A stretch of DNA of 64,000 nt, taken from contig NW_027266297.1 in the NCBI RefSeq assembly GCF_022045235.1, forward strand, positions 53,258,001 through 53,322,000, read 5' to 3'. A program made the translations under genes and the position numbers. This stretch comes from Haliotis cracherodii (taxonomy: Eukaryota). Each line of letters starts with the position of its first letter. The stretch's first letter is position 1. Under the pieces are notes generated by a model. The model had not been told where the DNA came from. It saw nothing but the letters and a program-made list of their open reading frames with translations, and did no database searches. Below, piece by piece: positions 3,749 to 53,761 of this stretch.

Positions 3749-4057
3749 TATATGTTGGTTGCTAACATGGGGATCATGGAGGCATATACAAATGTATGTA
3801 TATGTAACAAAAGAATTTGACTCTATGCCTGTCGGTACATGAACTCTTAAAACAGCGACACCTGATCTTCACCCAAAGTATAGGGGATGTTGGATATCAA
3901 TACACTTTATCAAGCTTTTAAGGAACTCAGAATAGCTTATAACATTATGTGAAACTACACAGTGTCATTACAAGGCTGTCTGCCATAAATATTAAATAAA
4001 CAAGAGTTATCATTGCCGTAGTGGGAAATCACTTACCTGCAAAAAAGATAATGCTTG

Positions 4058-6070
4058 CAATTTGTAGATATGGGCAACACTGGGATTATGTTTGTAATTT
4101 GTAGATGTGGTCAACACTGGGATTATGCTTGTAATTTGTAGATGTGGGCAACATTAGGATTATGCAAGTAATTTGTAGATGTGGTCAACATTAGAATTAT
4201 GCAAGTAATTTGTAGACGTGGTCAACACTAGGATTATGCAAGTAATTTGTAGATGTGGTCAACACTAGGATTATGCAAGTCATTTGTAGATGTGGTCAAC
4301 ACTAGGATTATGCTTGTAATTTGTAGATGTGGTCAACACTAGGATTATGCAAGTCATTTGTAGATTTGGGCAACACTAGGATTATGTTTGTAATTTGTAG
4401 ATGTGGGCAATACTTGGATTATGCTTGTAATTTGTAGATGTGGTCAATACTGAGATTATGCTTCTAATTTGTAGATATGGGCAATACTTGGATTATGTTT
4501 GTAAGTTGTAGATGTGGTCAACACTAGGATTATGCAAGTAATTTGTAGATGTGGTCAACACTGAGATTATGCTTGTAATTTGTCGATGTGGGCAACACTG
4601 GGATTATGCAAGTAATTTGTAGATGTGGTCAACACTGGGATTATGCTTGTAATTTGTAAATGTGGGCAGGTAATTTATAGATGTGGTCAACACTGAGATT
4701 ATGCTTGTAATTTGTAGATGTGGGCAACACTGGGATTATGCAAGTAATTTGTAGATGTGGTCAACACTGGGATTATGCTTGTAATTTGTAAATGTGGGCA
4801 GGTAATTTGTAGATGTGGTCAACACTGAGATTATGCTTGTAATTTGTAGATGTGGGCAACACTGGGATTATGTTTGTAATTTGTAGATGTGGTCAACACT
4901 GAGATTATGCGAATAATTTGTAGATGTGGTCAACACTAGGATTATGCTCGTAATTTGTAGATGTGGGCAACACTGAGATTATGCTTGTAATTTGTAGATG
5001 TGGTCAACACTAGGATTATGCAAGTCATTTGTAGATGTGGGCAACACTAGGATTATGTTTGTAATTTGTAGATGTGGGCAATACTTGGATTATGCTTGTA
5101 ATTTGTAGATGTGGTCAATACTGAGATTATGCTTCTAATTTGTAGATATGGGCAATACTTGGATTATGTTTGTAAGTTGTAGATGTGGTCAACACTAGGA
5201 TTATGCAAGTAATTTGTAGATGTGGTCAACACTGAGATTATGCTTGTAATTTGTCGATGTGGGCAACACTGGGATTATGCAAGTAATTTGTAGATGTGGT
5301 CAACACTGGGATTATGCTTGTAATTTGTAAATGTCGGCAGGTAATTTGTAGATGTGGTCAACACTGGGATTATGTTTGTAATTTGTAGATGTGGGCAACA
5401 CTGGGATTATGTTTGTAATTTGTAGATGTGGTCAACACTGGGATTATGTTTGTAATTTGTAGATGTGGTCAACACTGAGATTATGCGAATAATTTGTAGA
5501 TGTGGTCAACACTAGGATTATGCTTGTAATTTGTAGATGTGGGCAACACTGAGATTATGCTTGTAATTTGTAGATGTGGTCAATACTGGGATTATGCGAA
5601 TAATTTGTAGATGTGGGCAACACTGAGATTATGTTTGTAATTTGTAGATGTGGGCAACACTGAGATTATGCTTGTAATTTGTAGATGTGGGCAACACTAG
5701 GATTATGCTTGTAATTTGTAGATGTGGTCAATACTGGGATTATGCGAATAATTTGTAGATGTGGGCAACACTGAGATTATGTTTGTAATTTGTAGATGTG
5801 GGCAACACTGAGATTATGTTTGTAATTTGTAGATGTGGGCAACACTAGGATTATGCTTGTAATTTGTAGATGTGGGCAACACTGAGATTATGTTTGTAAT
5901 TTGTAGATGTGGTCAACACTGGGATTATGCTTGTAATTTGTAGATGTGGTCAACACTGGGATTATGTTGTTGTTGTTGCATTAGGTGTTTAAGAGGTCGC
6001 CTTCTGCCTAGGCAATTTCGGCTGAACTGGGATTATGTTTGTAATTTGTAGATGTGGTCAACACTGAGAT
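4058..6070. repeat. 37-bp tandem repeat, about 50 copies
   Basis: Unit TAATTTGTAGATGTGG(T/G)CAACACTGGGATTATGCTTG; successive starts at 4095 and 4132. Confidence 0.97.
5969..6025 (-). mobile_element. 5'-truncated non-LTR retroelement end with (AAC)n tail, inside the satellite
   Basis: 14-bp TSD ACTGGGATTATGTT at 5955-5968 and 6026-6039; the minus strand ends ...cacctaatgcaacaacaac. Confidence 0.7.
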
Positions 6071-7361: not shown

Positions 7362-7971
7362 CAGGGGAAAGACGAAGAAGCACACTTGAGAGGAAACATT
7401 TATCAAATCAGTGTAGGTTAGTAGGAAACAGATATAATGAAAAAGATTTCTTCCGCAATATTCCCTTAAAAACTGAGTCACTGCACTTTCTTAATTTCCT
7501 TTCTGAGCAGTTTCCCTCAATGAAATCAAACACTTTTCCAGTTGTCAAAGCAAGACGACACACGAGAACGCCTACAGAGGTAGAGTAGCCTTTACTTCTA
7601 GACAGATGTATATTGAATCATAAATGTAACTGAATAAATAAAGCCTGAATTGAACCTTGCTAACTCTAATTTCATTAAATGCATATAAAGGCTGGTTATA
7701 TTTAATTCCACATCAGAAGGAATTTCTATGTAGTATGTATCTTACTAACTATATTACTTAAGGGGCATATGGACACTGACGTGACCCCGACACACTTGGG
7801 TAGGCAGCGCATACAACTCGACGAGCTGGTGTCAGAGCATTCACTTTACAACGATTCATAGATGTAGGCTCATGATATACATAATAACTTCCACTAATTG
7901 GCAATATCGTATTAATAACTCTGGTTAATTCAATGTATATATACGTCATCATTGTTTTCAGCAGAGGAAAT

Positions 7972-10309
7972 ATGGATTTGACTTGGATATTGTTAATCTA
8001 TTCATCGCTTGATGTCGGAAGTTGGGGTACGTATACATATTACTAATATATATGTTATATATTCATTTGTCTAAATACATATTGTTCCTTTTAAATGCTA
8101 TGCATTCATATCAATAAATGACTTTCTCACAACCTGTTTACTTGGTACCAATTCACTTCCTGCATATGAAACAACATCATTCCTTGATTAAATCGTTTTT
8201 GTTTCAGGGGGCAATGATGTTTGCAAACATATTGAGGTGTGCTGTCTTAATAAAGACAAACAGTGTAAAAGGGAAGCGTCGTCAGATATTTGCAAAGTCG
8301 AATGCAGTAAATATCATGATTGTTCCACAAACGACGTTCGGCTTTCGAAAGAAGGGATTGCATGCAAAGCAAATTGTACAAATGACATTGGGGCATGCGA
8401 TGTCGAATGCATCCCTGGACATTACGGTACCAAATGTCAATTTGGATGTAATGGTAAATGTAGAATGCATAAGTGTTACAGAGATAATGGCTCGTGCGTT
8501 GACGGTTGTGAGGCAGGCCACTTTGGAGATAAATGTGAGTCGGCATGTAACAGTAATTGCAAGGACAAAAAATGTGACAGGAGTAACGGAAGCTGCATCA
8601 ATGGGTGTTCTCCTGGCTATTACGGTGAAGACTGTCTTAGTAAATGTGAAACATCATGCCGTTATCACGTTTGTATTGGGAAGACTGGCAACTGTCTTTT
8701 TGGATGCACTGAGGGTTTCTATGGGCTTCTGTGCAAAAAGACTTGCTCTGACGATTGCTTTCTATGCCATCCTGAATTTGGGGAATGCATCTTTGGTAGG
8801 TACATATTTGAAACATCTTTTGAAGTAAGAGCGAATTCAGAGCAATACGAGTATTGTGATACATAATCAATCAACATTACCATGTTATTTGGATAACAGA
8901 TTAAGAATACCTTTGTGGTTCAGACAATAGCTCATGGTAACCCTCTTGATTGTTCCAGATCATAGTCCTGAGCTCGAGCTCGAGGGTACTCCTTGCACCA
9001 CGAAGATACTCGTTGTCTTTTGGGGGTCAGCTGGAGTGCTCATCCTCCTTGCTGGAGCGGCAGTGTTGATGTGCAGGTAACTCAGATTATTGTTTAATGT
9101 TTATGTATATTCAAACGCCAGTGTACATGTTGCTGTACATATGTCAGATAAACATACATGAGGCCAATGGTCCAGATAATCAACCATTGTTTTAAAACTG
9201 TTGATAACAGTAATGTTCTATTTTTCAAAACCATTTTTTATCTTCTTTCATTTTCAATAACATGTCAAATATAAGCCCTGCTAACAAAATAAAATATCAA
9301 AATTTTAATCCGCTTTAAAATGATATAAAGCATGACTGTGGCATACCTTGTACACATAATTGTAATTATGGTGTGAAATTAGTCAGATCACCTTTTGACT
9401 GTTTATGACCTATCAGTGTAGTGATGAGTTGTAACTTGTTTCCTAGTCATGGCTTAGGATCATTCCTTTAGATCAACCATGATCAGCACCTTAGTCTTAT
9501 ATTAGTTAATTACCTTAGTTAATAAATCTAACAAATAGGCTGATAACCTGACGCGTTTATATAAATTTTGAAACTACGCGTTGTCAGTCTGTATTGGTAC
9601 AGTTAGGATAAAACAGCACAAAAAACGAATAATACATTTCGTGTTTATTCACCACAGGAGCCAAACTTGTAGTTTCATTCACAAGAAAAAGAAGAAAGGA
9701 TTAGACACGCTGTTCATAGATACTAGAGCTCCAATGGACTTACCCAGCGTGCCCAGTCAAGACACCAGATCAAGCCACTATGAGGAAATCATGTGTGGTG
9801 AAAAAGATCGTCACTTTCAGCATATTAGTAAAAGTACGGGTAGTATAAACCTGAGAACCTTAATCAACACCATGAAACATCCAAACCAATGCAACACCGC
9901 TAAACGTAAAAGAAACAGGGCAAACGTCGGGAGAAACGCAATGTCACTGGCGTCATCGGTGCACACAATAGACAATTTTCCAACGTGTTGGCTAGGATCG
10001 GCGACTGATTTTGATGAAATGTCGGAACATCCTGATAAGAAGGAAGCACCTCTGGTAAGACCCCTTCAAGCTTCCCAGAAGGAAGCCGTGCGTTTTTCAG
10101 ATGTCCCAAGGGATGAGGATGAAGCAGAAGATATGGATACATCCGTGAAGGAAAGAGAGGGAGAAACTAAGTCACAGGCTGACGATGTGCCAAGGGAAGA
10201 AGCTGGCAAGAGATCCTACATCTCCGCTGTTTTTAATGAAACGGATGAAGATACAATGATCGATGATTCATGTAAAGGAATATATCCGGGATTGAAAAAG
10301 GAAGACTAA
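7972..10309 (+). CDS. R2: type I EGF-repeat receptor with long Tyr-motif tail (470 aa)
   Basis: Exons 7972-8026 (MDLTWILLIYSSLDVGSWG), 8208-8795 (EGF array), 8959-9076 (TM PCTTKILVVFWGSAGVLILLAGAAVLMCR) and 9658-10309 (tail with SHYEEI, YISAV, YPGL). All junctions are GT-AG and the total is 1413 nt in frame. Confidence 0.9.
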
Positions 10310-14830: not shown

Positions 14831-16273
14831 TAAACTGCAAATGTTACATTAAAGTCAAAATATCAAATCTTGAAAATGAACAAGAGAATATACGGAAGTA
14901 GTTCCCATGCAACGTTCCATACAAAGTTTCAGAGCGAAGGACGTCTTTTGAGAGAGTTTTACAGCATATTCGAGGGTATCAAAGGGAGAAGGTAAGTACA
15001 TATATATTATCGAAAAATAACATGTGTTGAGCCCCGGCACTACTAACTTCGAACCTTTTGAAAAATGTCATGATCAGGTGTCATTATTGTTTTGAGAAGC
15101 AGTGTGAAGTTTGAGCTTCATTGTTCCGGTGGTTTCTGAAGAGAGGATGTTCACAAAACCTGGGATGCTTTTTTAGAGAAATAACAGCATGGTCAAGGTG
15201 CAAAGGTTAAATATAGGTCAAACTTAAAGGTCGAAAAAGAAACCCAGATTAGTATGTTGAGTAACACCACCAACTAAACACACAACGGATATCATTACTT
15301 TTGAAAAACATGGTAAGGGTTATATAGCTGACGAGGCGAATTTCGAATGTTTTGTAAGCACATTACACAAAACACATGTAGCGACAAGTTGTTTGTCGTT
15401 TGCAGTTTTAGGAGAAAGACCCTTCTTTAAAGCTGCATAGTCCGTATCATTTCAGAATTTCACAATCTCCAAAATCTAGTATATTTAAATGTTATTGACT
15501 CTCACGTCAGCACAATATATTTGGACGTTTATTATCATATAAACAAAATGCAGGTAGAGACATATCGCGTGACTGCATTTTACTGGAGCATGTAAAATGG
15601 AAATGATATTAACATTTGTCACGAACACGGCCCATGCCTTTTTACATTTTTCAATACTAATTCAAAAGAATTCACTTATTCTTTTAAAGGTCCTCTTCAT
15701 TCATTATACGACTTTTCATACATTATGTAGAAAACAATGGTCGTTATCTTGATCTATTAAAGAAATAGCACCATTGTTCATGAAAATCAATCAAACGATC
15801 ATAAAATGCACGCATAATATTATTGCCACGTAACTGAAATTCAGGCTGTAAAGTTTACGGATCAAGAAACAGATTACAAATGGAAATACAAACACATCTT
15901 GTTATTATATTGCAAAATTTATCCAGTATTTTCCGTAAAATGATACGATCATAAATTTCATGAACTGTTTCCTTTTGAGAACATTCAGTTTCCTTTAACA
16001 TATGAGTTAATAGCCAATGTTTTTTTATAGCAGGCACAGTTGGAGAAGAAGGAATGTGTCCTATATACATTTATGAATATGAGTTGTGTGGTATATGTAT
16101 CAGTGAATAGATAGAAGAAAAGAAGCATAACAAGTTTAAACATTGAATGTGTTTATGGATGTAAGATTATTCAACATATTCAGGCAATGTGTCGCCATAG
16201 TGGTAGTGTCTGTTTTTGTGTTCATCATTGTGTTCCCATTAATTGGGTTACTATCCTTTTCAACAGGGGAAAC

Positions 16274-17765
16274 ATGGACCTAATTTGGATTATGTACGTC
16301 TGTCTAACTCTTGTTCTTGCTCAAGGTGACAAAGTGACCGGAATGAAAGGTACGTAAGCATTTAACGCATGTCACTATACTTCAAATACACTTAAAAATA
16401 TTCATGTCTGCACGATTTCCTTTCAATGCTTTGACGAAGACATACACCAGTCACATTTTAATATTGCTTTGGTGGGTTGGGACGTCCAAGTGCCTTTTAG
16501 ACAGAGGCGAACTTATTCGGGGTCCTCCCGTCCTCCATGCGGCGGACGTGGCCGAGCCAGCGAAGACGGCGCTAGTGAAAGGCGTTGAAAATATTTTCTT
16601 GTCTGGAGAAGAGGGTCCAAAACTCGCTGTCGTACAGCAATTCGCTGACGTCACACATTCTCTTCGTCAATTTTGTGAGGACGGAAGACGCTTTGCCGAC
16701 CCGCCTGTTGATCTGAGCATCCACGGGCAGATTGTGTGCGACGGGGGAGCCGAGGTAGGTGAACTTATATTCAGTTGTGCCTTGACATAAATGTTCTGGC
16801 TTGGTATATTTCAGAACCCGAACCCGAACGTTCTTGCACAGCAGAGATACTCGCTGCTTTTTTGGGGTCAGTTGGAATGTTCATTCTACTTGCAGGAGCT
16901 GCAGTGGTCATGTATAGGTAAGTCAGGCCAGTGCACATTAACACTGGATGAAGAGATATACTTAAATGATGTAATTCAATTTTAATATCAATCCCATGAC
17001 TACCTGCAGTAACGCTCCTTTGCATATCAATTATGATGAAATTAAATGTATGAATATATGACTGTACTTGCATGTGTCGAAGCATGTGTGTGTAGTTGTG
17101 TATGTGTGCGCGCGTATACGCTTTACTTATCTTCCAATTATGATAAACATTGTTGTTCCCACAGGAATCGACTACTTACTTCCTTTGGGAAAAGGAGAAA
17201 AAAGGGATTAGATACACTGTTCGACGACACTTCCTCTCCTATGCGACCTCCGTCAAGGGCCCATCGCGAATCCATGTTAAATGGCTATGCTGACGTAATG
17301 AGCATCGACACTGCCTGTCACTATCGTCGTGTCAGCAGAAGTCTTGGCAGTATCAATTTTAGAACGTTCAGAGCGAGCACCGTGAAGGGTTCTACTCTGT
17401 ACAATACTAAAAGAAGTAAAATGAGCACAAACGCCGCAGTGGACATTACCATATCAGTGGAGCCCCCACAATTTAAAATATACGATCAGCAATCGTATTG
17501 GTTGGGCACGGAGACGGACTTTGAAGACGTGTACAAAAGTTCCCCAAAGAAAAGGGCAACTCTTCGCAGATACTATGCAGGTCTTCGGGAGGAAGCCGCC
17601 ATGTACCCCGACACCCGTACAGATAAAGATGAAGAGGATACAGCATCGGAGGAACCACGGGGAGCCACTGGGACGCAGACACATTGTGCATCAAGGGATG
17701 TACGAAGCAAATTTCTTTACATCTCCCCTGTGTTTAACGAAAAAAAAGCAGAATCAAAGACATGA
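16274..17765 (+). CDS. R3: ectodomain-less transmembrane paralog of R2, putative signalling adaptor (259 aa)
   Basis: Exons 16274-16349 (MDLIWIMYVCLTLVLAQGDKVTGMK, donor gtacgt), 16815-16917 (EPEPERSCTAEILAAFLGSVGMFILLAGAAVVMYR) and 17165-17765 (tail homologous to R2: KKGLDTLFxDT, GSINxRT, WLGxxTDF, YISxVFNE). Total 780 nt with no stop or frameshift, and no EGF exon in intron 1. Confidence 0.85.
16460..16770 (-). mobile_element. RTE-clade LINE relic in intron 1 of R3
   Basis: Minus strand reads KFTYLGSPVAHNLPVDAQINRRVGKASSVLTKL and RLRWLGHVRRMEDGRTP, both RTE ORF2 signatures; internally deleted. Confidence 0.85.
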
Positions 17766-18429
17766 AAACATTTCATTGATGATATCGGTAAATCAGGACA
17801 AAGTGTCGGCAGTCACTGAGTTTGAATATCTACATCTGTAAGTGTCAGAAAATCTTAACTATCAACTTATTGTGCATATACCTGGTGACTGGAAACATAC
17901 GTTACTGCCAAAATGACGAATTGTACTCTTTACGTCATCAAAGACCAAGACAACATGTGCGATCTGTTTCGATATCAAGTATGGTATGGACTGTAATAAT
18001 CTATTAGTGATCGTGGCACGCATGTGGTGTGATGTTATTGATTAGCGTAGTGCGTCGCCGTTCTAATATCACAGGCTAGAGAGAAATGACTCTTTTGCTA
18101 TCTCTTTAATGTCAGTATAGCACCCCCTCGTTAGTCTCCGAGTTATCTCAGAGAAAGTCAACCTTAACCTCTAAGTTTTTCATACATGTTTTCTCATGCG
18201 AACTACCAACTGTATGGAGCTATATTCTTAAAATGAGTATTTAGGATTATTGTATTAAATAAACTGTTCGTGTAAATACATATTCAGCTTACATAAAATG
18301 TTCTATTATTAATTATGTAACAAAGAACATATTTGTAAATAATTTATTCTATGGATTATACGATGAGCTAACATGTACAAGCCTCAGTGTATACATTAAA
18401 GTTTAGTAATTTATAGATATTGCACTTAT

Positions 18430-20579: not shown

Positions 20580-21981
20580 TATGCTGAACAACAAAAGTTC
20601 CTGTGACATTGAATAAGATTTAATGCAAAGTCATGTGTTTTACCAAATCTGAAACAATTACGGTTTGCAACAGATGAAAGACTCCTGTAAGTGTTCAAAT
20701 GGTTTAATTTGCCATACTGACTTCAGAAAATGCGTGATTTCATAAAAACATGAATATGCCAAAATATCAATTTACAAATCAATAGCGTGTGTGTCCACCT
20801 CATGGAACGGACCAGGCGTCGCACAAAGTCCTGTGGGATATCTGTCCATACTTGCTGGAGCATGTTTCGAAGTTCATGGAGTGTCTGTGGAACACGTGGT
20901 TTACGTCGGAGGCGCCGAACAATCTTATCCCACATGTGCTCGACTGGTGAGAGATCGGGGGAGCGAGCCGGCCAGGGGATGACATTCACGTTGTTTTGTT
21001 GACGAGAATCCTGAACAAGTCGAGCAATATGAGGCCGGGCGTTGTCATGTTGAAAGGTAATGCCTTGGCCACGACGACGCAAAAGCGGTAAAAACAGGGC
21101 CGATGATCTCGTCGCGGTAGCGCTGTCCATTGAGATTTCCCTCTACCACTATCAAACGGGTCCTCTGTCTTGCTGTAATCCCACCCGATACCATAACGCT
21201 GCCGCCCCCGAACCGATCTTCTTCAATGACACAATGATTGACGTAACGTTCATGTCGACGTCCATCGCTGTGGCTGAGGTGAAAACGAGACTGGCCAGTG
21301 AATGGAACTTGTCCCCACTGCATAGACGTGCTTGACGGGGGTTTCCTGTCAAAATGAGACGTCTGGCGGGTCTTCTGGCGACAATCCCTGCACATCTGAG
21401 GCGGCGACGTACGGTTTGTGAAGATATTCGTCGAAAGCCAGGGATACTTCTTGCAGTCACTGTTGCTGGCTGGAATCGATTTCGTAGGTGTGTTGTTCGA
21501 ATCCAGTTGTCTTGGTTACGCGTGGCCTGCCACTCCGAGGATCGTCTCTGACTGCATTCGTCTGTTGCCAACGTTGCCATAAACACCAAGTGGTGTTTCT
21601 GTGGACGTCAAATTGTCTTGCAACATCACGTTGACAAGATCCTGCTTCAAGCATACCAATGGCTCACAGACGCTCATTTACGGATAGGTGTGGCATTTCG
21701 TAATGTTGAATAATTGCGTAATATTGTTGTTTTTCTGAGTGGCTGTTTTCAGCACGATGCTAAACAATGCATATTGAATCCCGTAAACGCACATGTTTTT
21801 TATACCCATTCTTAGGTTGTGAAATGCATGGGGCTTGCATAAAAATCAACTCTTTTCTGTATCAGTTCCGTTTTTTGTGTCTTGATTCCATACATGTACT
21901 ACAATAATGAAAACCAAACTTTACTTGTTTGAAAAATGCACTAAAATATTGGTGTCACAGGAACTTTTATTGTTGAGTGTA
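20580..21981 (-). mobile_element. Tc1-family DNA transposon, defective copy 1
   Basis: Imperfect ~28-bp TIRs (TATGCTGAACAACAAAAGTTCCTGTGAC at the left end, inverse at 21954-21981). The transposase is split over several ORFs: RDVARQFDVH, GGGSVMV, FQHDNARPH, WPARSPDLSPVEHMWD. Confidence 0.93.
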
Positions 21982-25556: not shown

Positions 25557-25834
25557 AAGAACATTGGAACACGATCTTAGATGTTATATCAATCTTTGTG
25601 GACTCATCATCTTATGTGACGTTGGCAGGTCTTTTTGTTTACCAACTGGATGTCTTGTTTCTCGTTTTTAGTGGCAACGCTTTTCAATTTTCAATGACAT
25701 CCTCTGTTGAGTGACCACTAAATGGTAAAATGATATAACAGAATGAAATCGGACAACATGCTGCACACGCATTTATTACCACATTCCAATAAAATAGTTT
25801 CCACTTAACTGAAGTGTGTTGTTCCTTTGTTTCC

Positions 25835-27360
25835 TTCACCGCCTACGTACACTCAACTTCACCGCCTCCGTACACTCAACTTCACCGCCTCCGTACACTC
25901 AACTTCACCGCCTCCGTACACTCAACTTCACCGCCTCCGTACACTCAACTTCACCGCCTACGTACACTCAACTGCACCGCCTACGTACACTCAACTTCAC
26001 CGCCTCCGTACACTCAACTTCACCGCCTACGTACACTCAACTTCACCGCCTACGTACACTCAACTTCACCGCCTCCGTACACTCAACTTCACCGCCTACG
26101 TACACTCAACTTCACCGCCTACGTACACTCAACTTCACCGCCTACGTACACTCAACTTCACCGCCTCCGTACACTCAACTTCACCGCCTACGTACACTCA
26201 ACTTCACCGCCTACGTACACTCAACTTCACCGCCTACGTACACTCAACTTCACCGCCTACGTACACTCAACTTCACCGCCTACGTACACTCAACTTCACC
26301 GCCTACGTACACTCAACTTCACCGCCTCCGTACACTCAACTTCACCGCCTCCGTACACTCAACTTCACCGCCTACGTACACTCAACTTCACCGCCTCCGT
26401 ACACTCAACTTCACCGCCTCCGTACACTCAACTTCACCGCCTCCGTACACTCAACTTCACCGCCTACGTACACTCAACTTCACCGCCTCCGTACACTCAA
26501 CTTCACCGCCTCCGTACACTCAACTTCACCGCCTACGTACACTCAACTTCACCGCCTACGTACACTCAACTGCACCGCCTACGTACACTCAACTTCACCG
26601 CCTACGTACACTCAACTTCACCGCCTCCGTACACTCAACTTCACCGCCTCCGTACACTCAACTTCACCGCCTACGTACACTCAACTTCACCGCCTACGTA
26701 CACTCATCTTCACCGCCTCCGTACACTCAACTTCACCGCCTCCGTACACTCAACTTCACCGCCTCCGTACACTCAACTTCACCGCCTACGTACACTCAAC
26801 ATCACCGCCTCCGTACACTCAACTTCACCGCCTACGTACACTCAACTTCACCGCCTACGTACACTCAACTTCACCGCCTACGTACACTCAACTTCACCGC
26901 CTCCGTACACTCAACTTCACCGCCTACGTACACTCAACTTCACCGCCTCCGTACACTCAACTTCACCGCCTACGTACACTCAACTTCACCGCCTCCGTAC
27001 ACTCAACTTCACCGCCTACGTACACTCAACTTCACCGCCTACGTACACTCAACTTCACCGCCTACGTACACTCAACTTCACCGCCTACGTACACTCAGCT
27101 TCACCGCCTACGTACACTCAGCTTCACCGCCTACGTACACTCAGCTTCACCGCCTACGTACACTCAACTGCACCGCCTACGTACACTCAACTGCACCGCC
27201 TACGTACACTCAACTGCACCGCCTACGTACACTCAACTTCACCGCCTACGTACACTCAACTGCACCGCCTACGTACACTCAACTGCACCGCCTACGTACA
27301 CTCAACTTCACCGCCTACGTACACTCAACTTCACCGCCTACGTACACTCAACTTCACCGC
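25835..27360. repeat. 23-bp minisatellite, about 66 copies
   Basis: Unit CTTCACCGCCT(A/C)CGTACACTCAA; it accounts for the three overlapping ~525-aa ORFs. Confidence 0.97.
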
Positions 27361-33554: not shown

Positions 33555-36287
33555 ATGTTTATCAATGCATTTACTTGTTTAACACTCTTCATCTGTGGAT
33601 TTATCAATGGTAAGTAACAGGGTTGCAACAGTTTTATGATTTTTTTTGTTGAAGTTTATAAATGATCAGAAAGTTAAACTGAAAGTAACTCATATCACGA
33701 TCACAAAACGCACATTGTTTCTTGAGTATTTACTTGTATGCATATTCATTCCCGGTGACAATCAAAATATACAAATGTGAGTTACTTAGTAACTGAAAGC
33801 AATATTGTCTTGAATTTGTATGATTGTACAGGCTGTACAGGGGGCTGCAAAGATGGCTTCTACGGGCCCCAGTGTAGATATCGCTGCAATGGCAATTGTC
33901 GGAACAACCGCTGTAATACCTCTGCTTTTGGTGCAGCATCTTGCACAGATGGATGTAAAGACGGCTTCTGGGGTAACAGGTGTATCAGTAGATGTCCCCA
34001 CTTTTGTAAGCGATGCCATAATGACACTTCGTGCAGTGAATGTGATGGCTTCCATTTCGGACCAAACTGTACTACAAACTGCAGAGGAACATGTTCAGTG
34101 TCAGGTTGTAACAGTGACGGGACATGCAGGCAGGACAATCACACGGCTGATCCATGTGGCTCCAACTGCCTCCAGTGTAACGCCTCGACCGGCAGCTGCA
34201 ACCGCTGTAAAATAACTTACGCAGGAGTGAAATGTGAGGTCTATTGTGGAAACTGTAACGGAACTTGTTCAGTTGATGGCTGTATGGAAGGATGCTCGTC
34301 GGGATATCGGGGACCGTATTGTGAAGATGCATGTAGCAAATGGTGTTACGAAAATGTCTGTGATCAAGAGACCGGGAGTTGTTCAAAAGGGTGTCGTGGT
34401 GGATATACAGGGGACGTTTGTTCCAAAATATGCCCACATCACTGTCTACGGAACATCTGTCATCAACATTCAGGAAAATGCAAACACGGCTGTCAGAATG
34501 GATATTTCGGACCTTTGTGTAAATCTGTTTGTGAAAACTGTTTTGATGACGCCTGCAGCCGCAGCAACGGCCGGTGTGAGTACGGCTGTGTGGACGGCAA
34601 CTATGGGTTGGACTGTAACCAGGTGTGCAGTGAGCTGTGCAAGTCTGGAAGATGCCAGAGGGAAGATGGTGCGTGTTTAAAGGGAACGAGCGGAAGTAAG
34701 TTGTTTAATGTCACATCTATGTATCATGCGAAGTTTAGAAATGTTGGTCGCGGATAGCAAATGGATGGGTGACCATGTTCGACAGCGTTATTCCTGATAT
34801 TTTCTTAGGCTCCGATACTGCCTACCCTTATGCTAAACACTTTGTTCAAAATATGCCTTTGTTCACCCAGGATTAAATGGGCCAACTGAGAATGAAAACC
34901 GAGTGCACACTGGTTTATAGACATGGTTATAAGTGACATAAACATTCACTTGGTGAAACCTGGCGCATTGTATAAGGACTTCTTTTTCCTCTTCCTTTCC
35001 TCCATCTTAGTACATACATGTTGTCTTACTCCGTATTAATTATTGTGATACAATAACAGTAACTGTTGTATTATTAGTAAATACAAAAGATGTAATATGG
35101 AATTATCCAGGTTCAAGTTTGACATGTAGCTTTAAACAACGAATTTGAATAATTTTTCACAATACGCTTCTTTCGTTTGCAGAATCTACCCCAAAACCAT
35201 CCTTAGATGCAACAGTCAGTGCAAATGTGTATTTGATCCTTGCGTCAGTGGGAGTATTCTTGCTCTGTGTTGTTGCAGCAGGAATACTGATGATCAGGTA
35301 CATATGATAATGGTCCCGTGAAGATCTGGATTAGAATTGGTCTTCAGCAACCCATGCTTGTCGTAAGAGGTGATTAACGGGATCGGGTGGTCAGTCTCGC
35401 TGACTTGGTCAATGCATGTCATCGTATCCCAACTGCGTAGATCGATGCTCATGATGTCAATCACTGGATTGTCTGGTCCAGACTCGATTATTTACAGACC
35501 ACTGTCATATGGCTGGAGCAATGCTGAGCGCGCCGTTAAGCAACAAACAAACAAACAAAAGAAAACATATGACAATGAAGACAAATGATAGCAAGTGGAA
35601 AACACAAAGAGACTATGGCCCTTATGTAGAATGTCTCTTGATGATGAATTCCACTTTTCTATCACCGAAAACATGCAGTGATTTGCGAAATAATATTAAC
35701 CATTGATATATATGAAACTTATTCACAATATAAACTTAATTATAACAGTGGCTCTCTCTATTGTAACAATTAATTGTTGTGTCAAGTCAGTGGTGACCTT
35801 CACTAAACACCACTGTTATTCCTATTGCCACAGGTTCTGCCGGTCTCCCTGTCTTAACAGCCTGAACAGGAACAATCCTCCACCGTCAGGTCGATCACTA
35901 CCAGACCCGCCCCCACTACAGACCAGCAAGAACATGTACAGTGTTATATACGAAGACCAAATGGACCCGAGTGCCCAATCTCTAAGAAGCAACACCCTAA
36001 CTCCACCTTCGAGAACCCCTGGCCTCGATAGGCCAAACAGTTTGCCCCTGTCCAAAGACGATCCAGAAGAGGATGTGTTCTCAACCTCAGGTGAGGTGCT
36101 ACAAATGCGATCGCTTTGTGATACAACGCCATCAGAAGAACCTGAACTACACAGCCTGTGTGCCTCTCCTGACCCCGACGGTTCAACTTACGAGAGTCTC
36201 TCAAGTAGTGCACCGGGACACAAACAGACAACTGTTCCTCGTCCCTACATCACTCCAGTCACTGATGATCAACCCGAACAATCATAA
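33555..36287 (+). CDS. R6: type I EGF-repeat receptor with Pro-rich, ITIM-like tail (about 495 aa)
   Basis: Exons 33555-33609 (MFINAFTCLTLFICGFING), 33832-34695 (EGF array; an alternative in-frame acceptor lies 9 nt downstream), 35183-35297 (TM VYLILASVGVFLLCVVAAGILMIR) and 35834-36287 (RSLPDPP, MYSVI, STYESL, PYITPV). Total 1488 nt. Confidence 0.9.
35313..35560 (+). mobile_element. SINE-like family C in an R6 intron
   Basis: gtcccgtgaagatc...cttcagcaacccatgcttg...gcgccgttaagcaacaaacaaacaaac. Confidence 0.85.
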
Positions 36288-52254: not shown

Positions 52255-53761
52255 TATACTGAACAACAAAAGTTCCTGTGATATTGAATAAGATTTAATG
52301 CAAAGTTATGTTTTTTACCAAATCTGAAACAATTTCGGTTTGCAACAGATAAGAGACTCCTGTAAGTGTTCAAATGGTTTAATTTGTCATACTGACTTCA
52401 GAAAATGCGTGATTTCATTAAAAAAACCCATTAACATGCCAAAATGTCAATTTACAAATCAATAGCGTGTGTGTCCACCTCTGGTTGTGATGCAAGCAAC
52501 ACACCCTCGTCCCAGGCGTCGCACAAAGTCCTGTGGGATATCTGTCCATATCTGCTGGAGCATGTTTCAAAGTTCCTGGAGTGTCTGTGGAACGTCGGTT
52601 GACGTCGAAGGCGCCTATCCATCTCATCCCACATGTGCTCGATTGGTTAGAGATCAGGCGAGCCACCCGGCCAGGGGATGACATTCACGTTGTTTTGTTG
52701 AAGAGAATCCTGAACAAGTCGAGCAATATGAGGCCGGGCGTTGTCATGTTGAAAGGTAATGCCTGGGCCATGAAGACTAAAAAAACGGTAGAACAACAGG
52801 GCCGATGATCTCGTCGCGTAGCGCTGTCCATTGAGATTTCCCTCTACCACTATCAAACGGGTCCTCTGTCTTGCTGTAATCCCACCCCATACCATAACGC
52901 TGCCGCCCCCGAACCGATCTTTCCCTATGACACAATGATAGACGAAACGTTCGCCTCGACGTCGGTACACTCGAATCCGTCCATCTCTGTGGCTGAGGTG
53001 AAAACGAGACTCGTCAGTGAATAGAACTTGTCCCCACTGCATGGCCGTCCAGCGTAGACGCTGTCTGCACCACTGTAGACGTGCTTGGCGGTGGTTTCCT
53101 GTCAAAATGGGACGTCTGGTGGGTCTTCTGGCGACAATCCCTGCACATCTGAGGTGACGACATACGGTTTGTGAAGATATTCCTCGAAGGCCAGGGATGC
53201 TTCTTGCAGTCACTGTTGCTGGCTGGAATAGATTTCGTAGGTGTGTTGTTCGAATCCAGTTGTCTTGTCGATTATTGGTAACGTGTGGCCTGCCACTCCG
53301 AGGATGGTCTCTGACTGCATTCGTCTGTTGCCAACGTTGCCATAAACACCAAATGGTGTTTCCGTGGACGTTAAATTGTCTTGCAACATCACGTTGACTC
53401 GATTCTGCTTCAAGCATACCAATGGCTCGTAAACGCTCGTTTTCGCACACGCGTGGCATTTCGTTATAATGTTGTATAATTGCGTAATTTTGTTTTTTTT
53501 CTGAGTGGTTGTTGTCAGCACGATGCTAAACAATGCATATGGAATCCCGTTAACGCATATGTTTTATACCCATTCTTGGGTAGTGAAATGCATGGGGCTT
53601 GCATAAAAGTCAACTTTTGCATGGAATGCATGCTTTTCTGTAGCAGTTGCGTTTTTGTGACTTGATTCCACACATGTACTATAATAATGAAAACCAAACT
53701 TGACTTGTTTGAAAAATACACTAAAATATTGGTGTCACATGAACTTTTGTTGTTGAGTGTA
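52255..53761 (-). mobile_element. Tc1-family DNA transposon, defective copy 2 (near full length)
   Basis: Same TIRs as copy 1. ORF 52647-53459 has an HTH region, VLFTDESRF, FQHDNARPH and SPDL*PIEHMWD, with a nonsense codon just before the catalytic E and a short compensated frameshift. Confidence 0.95.

What the first reader, a model, noticed from the sequence alone, without database searches (positions are those of the whole stretch)
16274..17765. R3: a signalling-adaptor-like protein formed by loss of the whole EGF exon
Seen: R3 matches R2 exon for exon (MDLxWI signal, TM exon, tail blocks), but the signal exon splices in phase directly to the TM exon. The 465-bp intron holds only an RTE relic where R2 has its 588-bp EGF exon. 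The ORF is intact although the tail is strongly diverged from R2, which suggests purifying selection. The mature ectodomain is about 15 aa with one Cys. Known: transmembrane adaptors such as CD3-zeta, FcR-gamma, DAP12 and TRIM/SIT have tiny ectodomains, a dimerising Cys and multi-Tyr tails. Inference: an adaptor arose from a receptor inside the cluster it may serve.
Basis: partly seen in the sequence, partly recalled or inferred. Interest (0 to 1): 0.92.

Follow-up and report, generated by a model that had tools for sequence, protein, structure and literature searches.

The report
Abalone receptor paralog without EGF ectodomain
A small abalone membrane-protein gene really is a copy of its neighbouring multi-EGF receptor that has lost the whole EGF part; it is spliced in related species and has kept an open frame across the genus, but its proposed role as a signalling adaptor is untested.

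Summary
The window is Haliotis cracherodii. R3 (exons 16274-16349, 16815-16917, 17165-17765) gives an intact 259-aa protein: signal peptide, about 15-18 aa outside with one Cys, one TM helix, and a 200-aa tail. It matches neighbour R2 (a PEAR1-like 470-aa receptor) exon for exon but lacks R2's 588-nt phase 1-1 EGF exon.

Transcript-like contigs from four relatives splice out intron 2. Two of them join exon 1 directly to exon 2. Two others, like H. rufescens LOC124111908, insert a 51-nt mini-exon that is absent from this genome.

EGF-less orthologs exist in H. rufescens and H. asinina. In a tree of the tails, R3 and R2 form separate clades (100/100), so the loss predates that species split. The frame is preserved: CDS indels are multiples of three, and conserved blocks remain.

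Among close relatives, however, the substitution pattern cannot be told from neutral. The "ITAM-like" motif is non-canonical and is broken in one relative. No RNA of the window's own species was laid.

The adaptor idea remains inference. The strongest hint is a Cys-TM module 75% identical between the paralogs, with Glu fixed in R3 and Lys fixed in R2. This is a real and modestly interesting gene, already annotated as "uncharacterized".

The parts
16274..16349 (+). R3 exon 1: start codon and signal peptide (MDLIWI...LAQG|DKVTGMK). 76 nt, ends in phase 1.
   Evidence: The donor is used in contigs of four relatives. 89% identical to H. rufescens P0001 residues 1-27.
16187..16273 (+). In-frame upstream extension (MCRHSGSV...). 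It corresponds to the alternative start of H. rufescens isoform X1.
   Evidence: ORF 16187..16357. P0004, 301 aa, starts with the same peptide. Contigs run co-linear from 15921 or 16049 into exon 1.
16350..16814 (+). R3 intron 1, 465 bp. It holds no EGF exon and no copy of the relatives' mini-exon.
   Evidence: Skipped in contigs X3 and X5.
16467..16768 (-). Decayed relic of a non-LTR (LINE) retrotransposon, the part C-terminal to the RT core, antisense to R3. Bounds are approximate.
   Evidence: Minus-strand ORFs carry LINE motifs. Short copies about 80% identical occur elsewhere in G000. Atlas lead to DUF6451 / endonuclease-RT at 0.87-0.92. Pfam gave no hit.
16815..16917 (+). R3 exon 2: EPEPERSC stalk with the single Cys, Glu at the membrane entry, and the TM helix. 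103 nt, phase 1 to 2.
   Evidence: 73% nt identity to the R2 TM exon. Covered by contigs in X1, X3 and X5.
16918..17164 (+). R3 intron 2, 247 bp.
   Evidence: Spliced out with GT..AG ends in contigs of X1, X3 and X5. Zero depth at 16938-17051 in all four runs.
17165..17765 (+). R3 exon 3: the 199-aa cytoplasmic tail and the stop codon. It carries KKGLDTLF, YADV-x8-YRRV, GSINFR, YWLGTETDF and FLYISPVFN.
   Evidence: AF2 mean pLDDT is 46, so no fold is predicted.
17766..18387 (+). R3 3' UTR, at least as far as relatives' contigs stay co-linear.
   Evidence: table 8 (X1 record 5 reaches 18387). It carries indels that are not multiples of three, unlike the CDS (table 4).
7972..10309 (+). R2, the EGF-bearing paralog used as comparator. 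Exons 7972-8026, 8208-8795 (EGF), 8959-9076 (TM) and 9658-10309 (tail).
   Evidence: 100% tblastn match to XP_071117988.1 in four pieces. The H. rufescens ortholog is named PEAR1-like.

Best explanation
R3 is a genuine gene conserved across the genus Haliotis (ortholog of H. rufescens LOC124111908). It encodes a small type I membrane protein: signal peptide, a stub of about 15-18 aa outside the cell with one Cys, one TM helix, and a roughly 200-aa tail that appears disordered and is rich in Tyr.

Origin. R3 is a tandem paralog of the PEAR1/MEGF10-like receptor R2. It most likely arose when the Cys-rich interior of the phase 1-1 EGF exon was deleted. That left a 51-nt remnant exon, still used in H. 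rufescens, which was then lost altogether in the H. cracherodii lineage. This happened before H. asinina split from the NE-Pacific abalones.

Mechanism (inferred). R3 is a ligand-blind, tail-only signalling subunit. It keeps the Cys-plus-TM module of R2 (75% identical, against 34% for the tail). Through that module it self-associates or pairs with R2-type receptors, with Glu in R3 facing Lys in R2. It thereby brings a different set of phosphotyrosine and linear motifs to the complex, or competes for them.

My sub-confidences: real EGF-less gene 0.9; loss rather than gain of the EGF exon 0.75; association through the Cys-TM module 0.3; a DAP12-type adaptor in the strict sense 0.12-0.15. The overall figure of 0.6 weighs the well-supported gene and origin parts against the inferred mechanism.
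For: Gene model and paralogy:
- Intact three-exon model with canonical splice sites.
- Exon-for-exon match to R2.
- Only R2 and R3 carry this tail in the 1.18-Gb genome. In 1.8 billion representative proteins the tail profile hit only three clusters, all Haliotis as far as they carry a name.

Transcription in relatives:
- Contigs splice out intron 2 with GT..AG ends in three runs. Two runs join 16349|16815 directly. Two runs carry the mini-exon.
- G000 has no second copy of the tail that could be a retrocopy.

Orthologs and tree:
- EGF-less orthologs of 271/301 aa (H. rufescens) and 251 aa (H. asinina).
- R2 orthologs with the EGF part in H. rufescens and H. rubra.
- The tree of tails separates R2 and R3 clades at 100/100.
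- The R3 tail is 97% identical between cracherodii and rufescens, against 94% for the R2 tail. R3 to asinina is 62%, against 68-69% for R2 to rubra.

Frame preservation:
- The only listed CDS indel is 18 nt, while the 3' UTR shows six listed indels that are not multiples of three (Fisher p 0.03).
- Under simulated drift to 62% aa identity, the chance of no stop codon is about 0.02.

Cys-TM module and origin by loss:
- The Cys-TM module, the fixed E/K difference and the G(A/T)(V/M)(N/D)D start shared by the mini-exon and the R2 EGF exon are shown.
- Most EGF exons of the cluster start in phase 1.
- The R6 TM exon has the same phases and a weak similarity to R3's (E 0.001).
Against: - No RNA from H. 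cracherodii itself was laid. All four runs differ from the window by 3-4%.
- NCBI's own model for this species is 5'-partial and lacks exon 1.
- Listed N:S changes are 14:8 (against relatives B/C) and 5:4 (against rufescens), giving pN/pS of 0.51 and 0.36 with p about 0.1. At 3.4% divergence neutral drift would itself give 93% aa identity.
- The first YxxV is YADG in relatives B/C.
- No Pfam family matches R3.
- By language-model features the protein resembles generic short single-pass proteins such as gpUL132 and TMEM119, not known adaptors.
- Finding orthologs through protein databases favours intact ORFs.
- The similarity between the mini-exon and the EGF exon start covers only 4-5 residues.
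- R2 has its own long tail, so a receptor-adaptor division of labour is not needed.
Confidence: 0.6

Rival explanations
1. R3 is a transcribed but functionless relic. It would be a truncated duplicate of R2 that lost its ligand-binding part and is drifting, with the ORF still open by luck and by ascertainment.
For: - The N:S pattern among close relatives does not differ from neutral.
- 93% aa identity to relatives B/C is what neutral drift gives at that divergence.
- The remnant mini-exon was lost in this lineage.
- There is a 6-aa deletion in H. rufescens and a V>G change in the Tyr motif in B/C.
- Intron-1-retaining contigs occur at a third to a half of the exon depth.
Against: - The ORF is open in cracherodii, rufescens, B/C and asinina. 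At 62% aa identity the chance of no stop is about 0.02.
- CDS indels are all multiples of three, whereas the UTR indels are not.
- Long blocks are conserved with asinina.
- R3 diverges no faster than the tail of the intact receptor R2.
Confidence: 0.12
2. The polarity is reversed. A small R3-like membrane protein would be ancestral, and R2 gained its symmetric phase 1-1 EGF exon by exon shuffling from a neighbouring cluster gene.
For: - Symmetric phase 1-1 exons are the classic substrate of exon shuffling (my knowledge).
- The R2/R3 signal, TM and tail exons show no strong similarity to other cluster members.
- R2's EGF exon is shorter (588 nt) than its neighbours' (about 900-1000 nt).
Against: - R3 sits inside a tandem array of at least eight EGF-exon genes.
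- The R6 TM exon has the same phases and size and a weak similarity.
- The relatives' mini-exon occupies the EGF exon's position and begins with the same G-x-x-(N/D)-D residues.
- R2's EGF exon is only about 30-35% identical to any neighbour, so there is no recent donor.
Confidence: 0.15
3. Assembly or annotation artefact. An EGF exon would be hidden by a collapse in intron 1, or the R3 exons would really be alternative 3' exons of R2.
For: - NCBI's H. cracherodii model is partial.
- Two N gaps lie 2-4 kb upstream.
- Relatives B/C have extra sequence in intron 1, after 16466 and at 16570.
Against: - Contigs of two relatives join exon 1 directly to exon 2. In the other two, contigs overlapping in the mini-exon link R3's own exon 1, the mini-exon and exon 2.
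- The H. rufescens and H. asinina models lack EGF.
- There are no N's inside the gene.
Confidence: 0.03

Closest known systems
PEAR1 / MEGF10 / Jedi-1 / Draper / CED-1 multi-EGF engulfment receptors
   Same: R3's paralog R2 is a single-pass receptor with repeated C..G(F/Y/H)(Y/F)G..C EGF units, and NCBI names its ortholog PEAR1-like. Like Draper, the tails are rich in Tyr. Draper signals through an ITAM that binds the Syk-type kinase Shark after Src phosphorylation, and its non-ITAM Tyr residues also count (PMC6219719).
   Different: R3 has no EGF or EMI part at all. The R2/R3 tail has no detectable sequence similarity outside Haliotis. No NPxY motif is present. Pfam and PDB sequence searches do not recognise even R2's EGF array.
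Disulfide-linked ITAM adaptors (DAP12/TYROBP, FcR-gamma, CD3-zeta)
   Same: A tiny ectodomain with one juxtamembrane Cys, an acidic residue at the outer end of the TM helix, and two YxxV/I motifs 8 residues apart in the tail.
   Different: The tail is about 200 aa, against 20-110 aa. The Glu sits at the membrane entry rather than in the membrane core. The motif has Val where the classical ITAM (D/ExxYxxL/I-x6-12-YxxL/I; PMC6994640) has Leu/Ile, and it is YADG in one relative. There is no sequence homology. The origin from a multi-EGF receptor is different. The figures and residue positions for the vertebrate adaptors are from my knowledge.
Transmembrane adaptor proteins (LAT, PAG, NTAL, LIME, SIT, TRIM, LAX)
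   Same: A short ectodomain, a single TM helix and a long disordered multi-Tyr tail. SIT and TRIM are disulfide dimers (my knowledge). By language-model features R3 resembles generic short-ectodomain single-pass proteins.
   Different: R3 has no cytosolic juxtamembrane CxxC palmitoylation motif. There is no homology. These families are vertebrate-specific.
Ectodomain-truncated receptor variants (Draper-II/III isoforms; plant RLCKs derived from RLKs)
   Same: A receptor family produces a member without the ligand-binding part that modulates or relays signalling (my knowledge).
   Different: Here the variant is a separate duplicated gene, not a splice isoform. It has a diverged tail (34% identical) but a conserved TM module.
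Mollusc MEGF receptor clusters (Biomphalaria sudanica SudRes1)
   Same: Tandem paralogous single-pass MEGF-domain genes in a gastropod, proposed to act in immune recognition (PMC12297450).
   Different: Those genes carry PTP or GBD domains. No EGF-less tail-only member is described in the passages read.

Membership tests
DAP12/FcR-gamma/CD3-zeta type ITAM adaptors | Very short ectodomain with a Cys that forms an interchain disulfide | tested here: inconclusive
   A stub of about 15-18 aa with one Cys is present. That Cys is conserved in all R3 and R2 orthologs. Disulfide formation cannot be tested in silico.
DAP12/FcR-gamma/CD3-zeta type ITAM adaptors | Acidic residue within the TM helix that pairs with a basic TM residue of a receptor | tested here: inconclusive
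   Glu (CTAEIL) is fixed in the three named R3 orthologs, and Lys (CTTKIL/ML) is fixed at the same place in three R2 orthologs. The residue lies at the membrane entry, not in the core. The pairing itself was not tested, and the complex prediction gave no verdict.
DAP12/FcR-gamma/CD3-zeta type ITAM adaptors | Canonical ITAM YxxL/I-x6-12-YxxL/I (consensus as quoted in PMC6994640) | tested here: not met
   The window has YADV-x8-YRRV. H. asinina has YAEV-x8-YRRI. Relatives B/C have YADG-x8-YRRV. R2 has YEEI-x8-FQHI.
DAP12/FcR-gamma/CD3-zeta type ITAM adaptors | Sequence homology to the family | tested here: not met
   No Pfam family matches. The profile search finds three clusters only, the named ones all Haliotis. 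The atlas look-alikes are other kinds of small TM proteins.
PEAR1/MEGF10/Draper multi-EGF receptors | Ectodomain with multiple EGF-like repeats | tested here: not met
   R3 has none, neither in the model nor in its introns. R2 has a 196-codon EGF exon.
PEAR1/MEGF10/Draper multi-EGF receptors | Descent from a family member (paralogy) | tested here: met
   The tail matches R2 with E 1e-29. The TM exon is 73% identical at nucleotide level. Phases and exon order are the same. R2's ortholog is named PEAR1-like by NCBI. That name is an automatic annotation and was not verified here.
PEAR1/MEGF10/Draper multi-EGF receptors | Tail motifs NPxY and ITAM that recruit PTB-domain and Syk-type effectors | tested here: not met
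   No NPxY is present in the R3 or R2 tail, and only the non-canonical two-Tyr motif is found. Binding cannot be tested here.
Expressed protein-coding gene (as opposed to pseudogene) | Spliced transcripts and an ORF conserved across species | tested here: met
   Spliced contigs occur in four runs of relatives. The ORF is open in at least four taxa. No RNA of the window's own species was laid.

The most novel reading that the evidence does not exclude
R3 is a true invertebrate signalling adaptor that arose independently of the vertebrate DAP12/FcR-gamma/CD3-zeta families. It would have come from a Draper/PEAR1-type multi-EGF receptor that shed its ectodomain. It would form disulfide-linked dimers through its conserved juxtamembrane Cys, dock through its Glu onto Lys- or Arg-bearing TM helices of receptors in the same cluster (R2, possibly R7), and recruit a Syk/Shark-type kinase through its paired YxxV/I motif.
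Probability: 0.12. Interest if true: 0.75.

Novelty: new variant of a known kind. Interest (0 to 1): 0.4.

Why it matters
Where ectodomain-less signalling subunits come from is poorly documented. To my knowledge the origins of DAP12, FcR-gamma and CD3-zeta are obscure, and in molluscs ITAM signalling has so far been shown on the receptor itself (CgIgR-Syk in oyster, PMC6994640).

Here the parent receptor and its EGF-less derivative still lie side by side. An intermediate state, the 51-nt remnant exon, survives in a sister species. That gives a clear, datable example of how a tail-only membrane protein can be made from a receptor by loss of a single symmetric exon.

If R3 does pair with R2-type receptors, it would be a tractable entry into signalling by the large, lineage-specific multi-EGF receptor clusters of gastropods. 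Such clusters have been linked to parasite resistance in snails (PMC12297450).

If it does not, this is simply a correctly re-annotated small membrane-protein gene in an endangered abalone.

Tried and rejected
No orthologous genomic DNA could be fetched and no codon-based dN/dS could be run. Only the substitutions listed by read laying, together with the protein sequences, were used.
- Complex prediction on the R2 and R3 stalk/TM pieces of H. rufescens gave no verdict. It is not evidence either way.
- AF2 on the tail with a 5-row alignment gave pLDDT 46 and no fold. This fits disorder, but the shallow alignment makes it weak.
- Pfam found nothing for the R3 tail, the R2 tail, the R2 EGF exon, full-length R2, R3 or the R6 EGF exon. 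The PDB sequence search with the R2 EGF exon also found nothing.
- The atlas look-alikes are generic small TM proteins and serve as a lead only.
- The relatives' mini-exon was searched in the window and in the whole genome at up to 3 mismatches. There were no matches.
- The R6 tail against the R3 tail showed no significant similarity.
- blastn found no intron homology between R2 and R3.
- The LINE relic gave no Pfam hit. A protein search of the own genome returned only the relic itself, so the RTE clade stays unverified.
- A search for an EGF-bearing protein with an R3-type tail (P0004 as query, length range up to 527 aa) found none.
- The joined R3 protein of this window was translated only inside a script to check the frame. 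Searches used single exons by reference or database proteins.
- No N stretch was filled.
Full report
**Identity of the window.** The window is G000:C34:53258001-53322000 of a 1.18-Gb genome. NCBI protein XP_071117988.1 of Haliotis cracherodii (P0007) matches the R2 exons at 100%. XP_071118431.1 (P0005) is identical to the window's translation of the end of R3 intron 1 plus exons 2 and 3. The window is therefore black abalone. It holds a tandem array of at least eight genes, each with one long Cys-rich EGF-repeat exon.

**The observation.** R3 has three exons:
- Exon 1, 16274-16349 (76 nt).
- Exon 2, 16815-16917 (103 nt).
- Exon 3, 17165-17765 (601 nt).

All have canonical splice sites. Joined inside a script they give 259 codons and a stop. 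R2 has four exons: 7972-8026, 8208-8795 (588 nt, phase 1-1), 8959-9076 and 9658-10309, exactly as in NCBI's 470-aa model.

R3 matches R2 in its signal exon (MDLxWI). It matches in the TM exon at 64% aa and 73% nt identity. It matches over the whole tail at 33-35% aa identity (E 1e-29). R3 intron 1 is 465 bp and holds no EGF-like sequence, and none lies anywhere between 10310 and 24119.

What intron 1 does hold, on the minus strand, is a decayed piece of a LINE reverse transcriptase. It carries the motifs INRRVGKASS and RLRWLGHVRRMEDGR and has short copies about 80% identical elsewhere in the genome. An atlas lead points to DUF6451 / endonuclease-RT. Pfam does not score it, so "RTE" is unverified. 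The two N gaps lie upstream of the gene.

**Is it transcribed and spliced as proposed?** One search for sequencing runs returned no run on record as RNA, only transcriptome-sized runs guessed to be RNA. Contigs of four such runs (organisms A-D, four studies) were laid on 15000-18400.
- All four differ from the window by about 3-4%, so none is H. cracherodii itself.
- Intron 2 (16918-17164) is skipped with GT..AG ends in X1, X3 and X5, and 16938-17051 has no depth in any run. The runs therefore contain spliced RNA.
- In X3 and X5 the contigs run from exon 1 straight into exon 2. The table writes this as 16343 to 16813 with the four letters GTAA between. That equals the junction 16349|16815 with a TG>GT change (Met>Ser, as in H. 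rufescens).
- In X1 and X8, exon 1 is followed by loose letters. In X1, exon 2 is preceded by overlapping letters that complete the stretch. Together they spell a 51-nt mini-exon (T-V-N-D-N-L-I-A-P-A-Q-N-T-T-T-V).
- X1 also carries the 18-nt deletion seen in the H. rufescens protein, so I infer that organism A is H. rufescens.
- The mini-exon has no match in the window or in the whole assembly at up to 3 mismatches.
- Contigs that retain parts of intron 1 are also present at lower depth. In relatives B/C the intron differs from the window after 16466 and has 94 extra letters at 16570.
- A retrocopy as the source of the joined form is unlikely, because the genome has only two places with this tail, R3 and R2.

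**Orthologs.** The tail exon finds three proteins:
- H. rufescens LOC124111908, isoforms X2 (271 aa) and X1 (301 aa). X1 starts at an upstream in-frame ATG that also exists in the window at 16187.
- A Logan-derived 197-aa ORF (P0002), whose substitutions are those of runs X3 and X5.
- H. asinina XP_067678730.1 (251 aa, 58-62% identical).

None has EGF repeats. A profile of the tails, run against 1.8 billion representative proteins, hit only these clusters and R2. R2 orthologs with the EGF part exist in H. rufescens, where NCBI names the protein "PEAR1-like", and in H. rubra.

A maximum-likelihood tree of the tails splits an R2 clade (cracherodii, rufescens, rubra) from an R3 clade (cracherodii, rufescens, B/C, asinina) with 100/100 support. 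The duplication and the EGF-less state are therefore older than the split of H. asinina from the NE-Pacific species.

**Selection.**
- Among close relatives the evidence is weak. Of the listed substitutions in exon 3, 14 are non-synonymous and 8 synonymous against B/C, and 5 against 4 for rufescens. This gives pN/pS of 0.51 and 0.36, with p about 0.1. Some substitutions were not listed by the tool, so the synonymous counts are lower bounds.
- Simulated neutral drift at 3.4% divergence already gives 93% aa identity.
- The frame, however, is protected. The only listed CDS indel is 18 nt, while the adjacent 3' UTR has six listed indels of 1, 2 or 4 nt (Fisher p 0.03).
- Under drift to 62% aa identity, the frame stays free of stops in about 2% of simulations.
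- Long blocks are conserved with H. asinina.
- R3's tail diverges no faster than the tail of the intact receptor R2. The figures are 97% against 94% between cracherodii and rufescens, and 62% against 68-69% at the deeper level.

I read this as a fast-evolving but maintained gene.

**Loss or gain of the EGF exon?** Four observations favour loss:
- R3 lies inside the EGF-receptor array.
- Most EGF exons of the array start in phase 1, like the junction that R3 keeps.
- The TM exon of R6 (35183-35297) has the same phases and size and a weak similarity to R3's (E 0.001).
- The relatives' mini-exon sits where R2 has its EGF exon and begins with the same residues. R3 rufescens has G-T-V-N-D and R3 asinina has G-A-M-N-D. 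R2 has G-G-N-D and R2 rubra has G-A-V-D-D.

The simplest history has three steps: tandem duplication, an internal in-frame deletion of the Cys-rich part that left a 51-nt remnant exon, and then loss of the remnant in the cracherodii (and B/C) lineage. The intron there also carries the LINE relic. The residue match is short, so I give loss about 0.75.

**How it may work.** The shown facts are these. The protein has a signal peptide. By reading the sequence, the outside stub is DKVTGMKEPEPERSC. There is one TM helix followed by a basic stop-transfer stretch, and then a tail with no predicted fold (pLDDT 46 with a shallow alignment) and no Pfam family.

The best-conserved part is not the tail but the Cys-plus-TM module. 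It is 75% identical between R2 and R3 of H. rufescens, against 34% for the tails, and it is nearly unchanged in H. asinina and H. rubra. Within this module one position is fixed differently: Glu in the three named R3 orthologs and Lys in all three R2 orthologs.

The tail keeps motifs shared with R2 (KKGLDTLF, GSIN.R, WLG..DF, YIS.VFN). It also has motifs of its own, including YADV-x8-YRRV where R2 has YEEI-x8-FQHI.

From this I infer a ligand-blind membrane subunit that self-associates or pairs with R2-type receptors through the Cys-TM module. It would add or compete for phosphotyrosine-dependent effectors. ITAM-Syk signalling exists in molluscs (PMC6994640) and in Draper-type multi-EGF receptors (PMC6219719). 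The R3 motif, however, is not the classical consensus and is YADG in relatives B/C. A complex prediction for the R2 and R3 stalk/TM pieces gave no verdict and is not used as evidence.

**Comparison and novelty.** R3 works, at most, like a DAP12-, SIT- or TRIM-type transmembrane adaptor. It is not a member of those families, since there is no homology and no canonical ITAM. By descent it belongs to the PEAR1/MEGF10-like receptors of abalone, but it lacks their defining ectodomain.

The gene is already in RefSeq as "uncharacterized protein" for H. rufescens and H. asinina. No paper in the library mentions LOC124111908. Three things are new here: the exon-level history, the remnant exon, and the correction of the H. 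cracherodii model, which is 5'-partial, starts inside intron 1 and misses the signal exon.

I rate it a new variant of a known kind with interest about 0.4. It is a clean evolutionary case with an attractive but untested functional hypothesis.

**Limits.**
- No RNA of the window's own species was examined.
- Organisms in the runs are coded. Their identities (A = H. rufescens; P0002 = B/C) are inferred from shared changes.

Noticed in passing
window 16775-16917: NCBI's H. cracherodii model XP_071118431.1 (249 aa, 'partial') starts inside R3 intron 1 (IQLCLDINVLAWYIS...) and reads through the acceptor. It misses the signal exon at 16274-16349. The likely reason is that the H. rufescens template has a mini-exon absent here.
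   Followed up: partly
window 16187-16273 and 7945-7971: An in-frame ATG at 16187 gives a 29-aa N-terminal extension, as in H. rufescens isoform X1. The 20 nt before the ATG are nearly the same in R2 and R3 (ttttcaRcag..gaaaYATGGA) and look like a splice acceptor. Relatives' contigs nevertheless run co-linear upstream to 15921, so the transcription start and the true start codon remain open.
   Followed up: partly
window 16835-16845 and 8990-9005: There is a paralog-specific fixed charge three residues after the conserved stalk Cys. It is Glu in R3 (cracherodii, rufescens, asinina) and Lys in R2 (cracherodii, rufescens, rubra). The TM helix also carries small-xxx-small runs (GSxG, AGAA).
   Followed up: partly
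window 35183-35297: The TM exon of the EGF receptor R6 has the same phases (1 to 2) and a similar size (115 nt) to the R2 and R3 TM exons, and it shares SVG.F.L...AA. The R6 tail ends with PYITPV, reminiscent of the YIS(P/A)VF of R2 and R3, but the tails are not significantly similar overall.
   Followed up: partly
window 16466 and 16570 (runs X3 and X5): In relatives B/C, intron 1 continues after 16466 with at least 255 letters unlike the window and has 94 extra letters at 16570. The intron has been remodelled between species around the LINE relic.
   Followed up: no
window 25834-27360 and 4047-5970: Two large tandem arrays are present. One has 66 copies of a 23-bp unit (97% matches), open in three frames for about 525 codons, with GC 0.51 and strong negative GC skew. 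The other has about 50 copies of a 37-bp unit with strong positive GC skew.
   Followed up: no
window 52647-53459 (-) and 20723-21589 (-): These are Tc1/mariner-type transposase relics. The first scores Pfam HTH_Tnp_Tc3_2 and DDE_3. The second has the same peptide motifs in broken frames.
   Followed up: partly
window 8210-8794, 33777-34754: Pfam and a PDB sequence search find nothing in these clearly EGF-repeat-like exons (repeated C..G(F/Y)(Y/F)G..C units). Domain-based annotation would miss the whole family.
   Followed up: partly
window 18056-18151: Run X8 (organism D) lacks 94 nt of the R3 3' UTR (ends GC..CA, so not an intron). This is a species-specific deletion.
   Followed up: no
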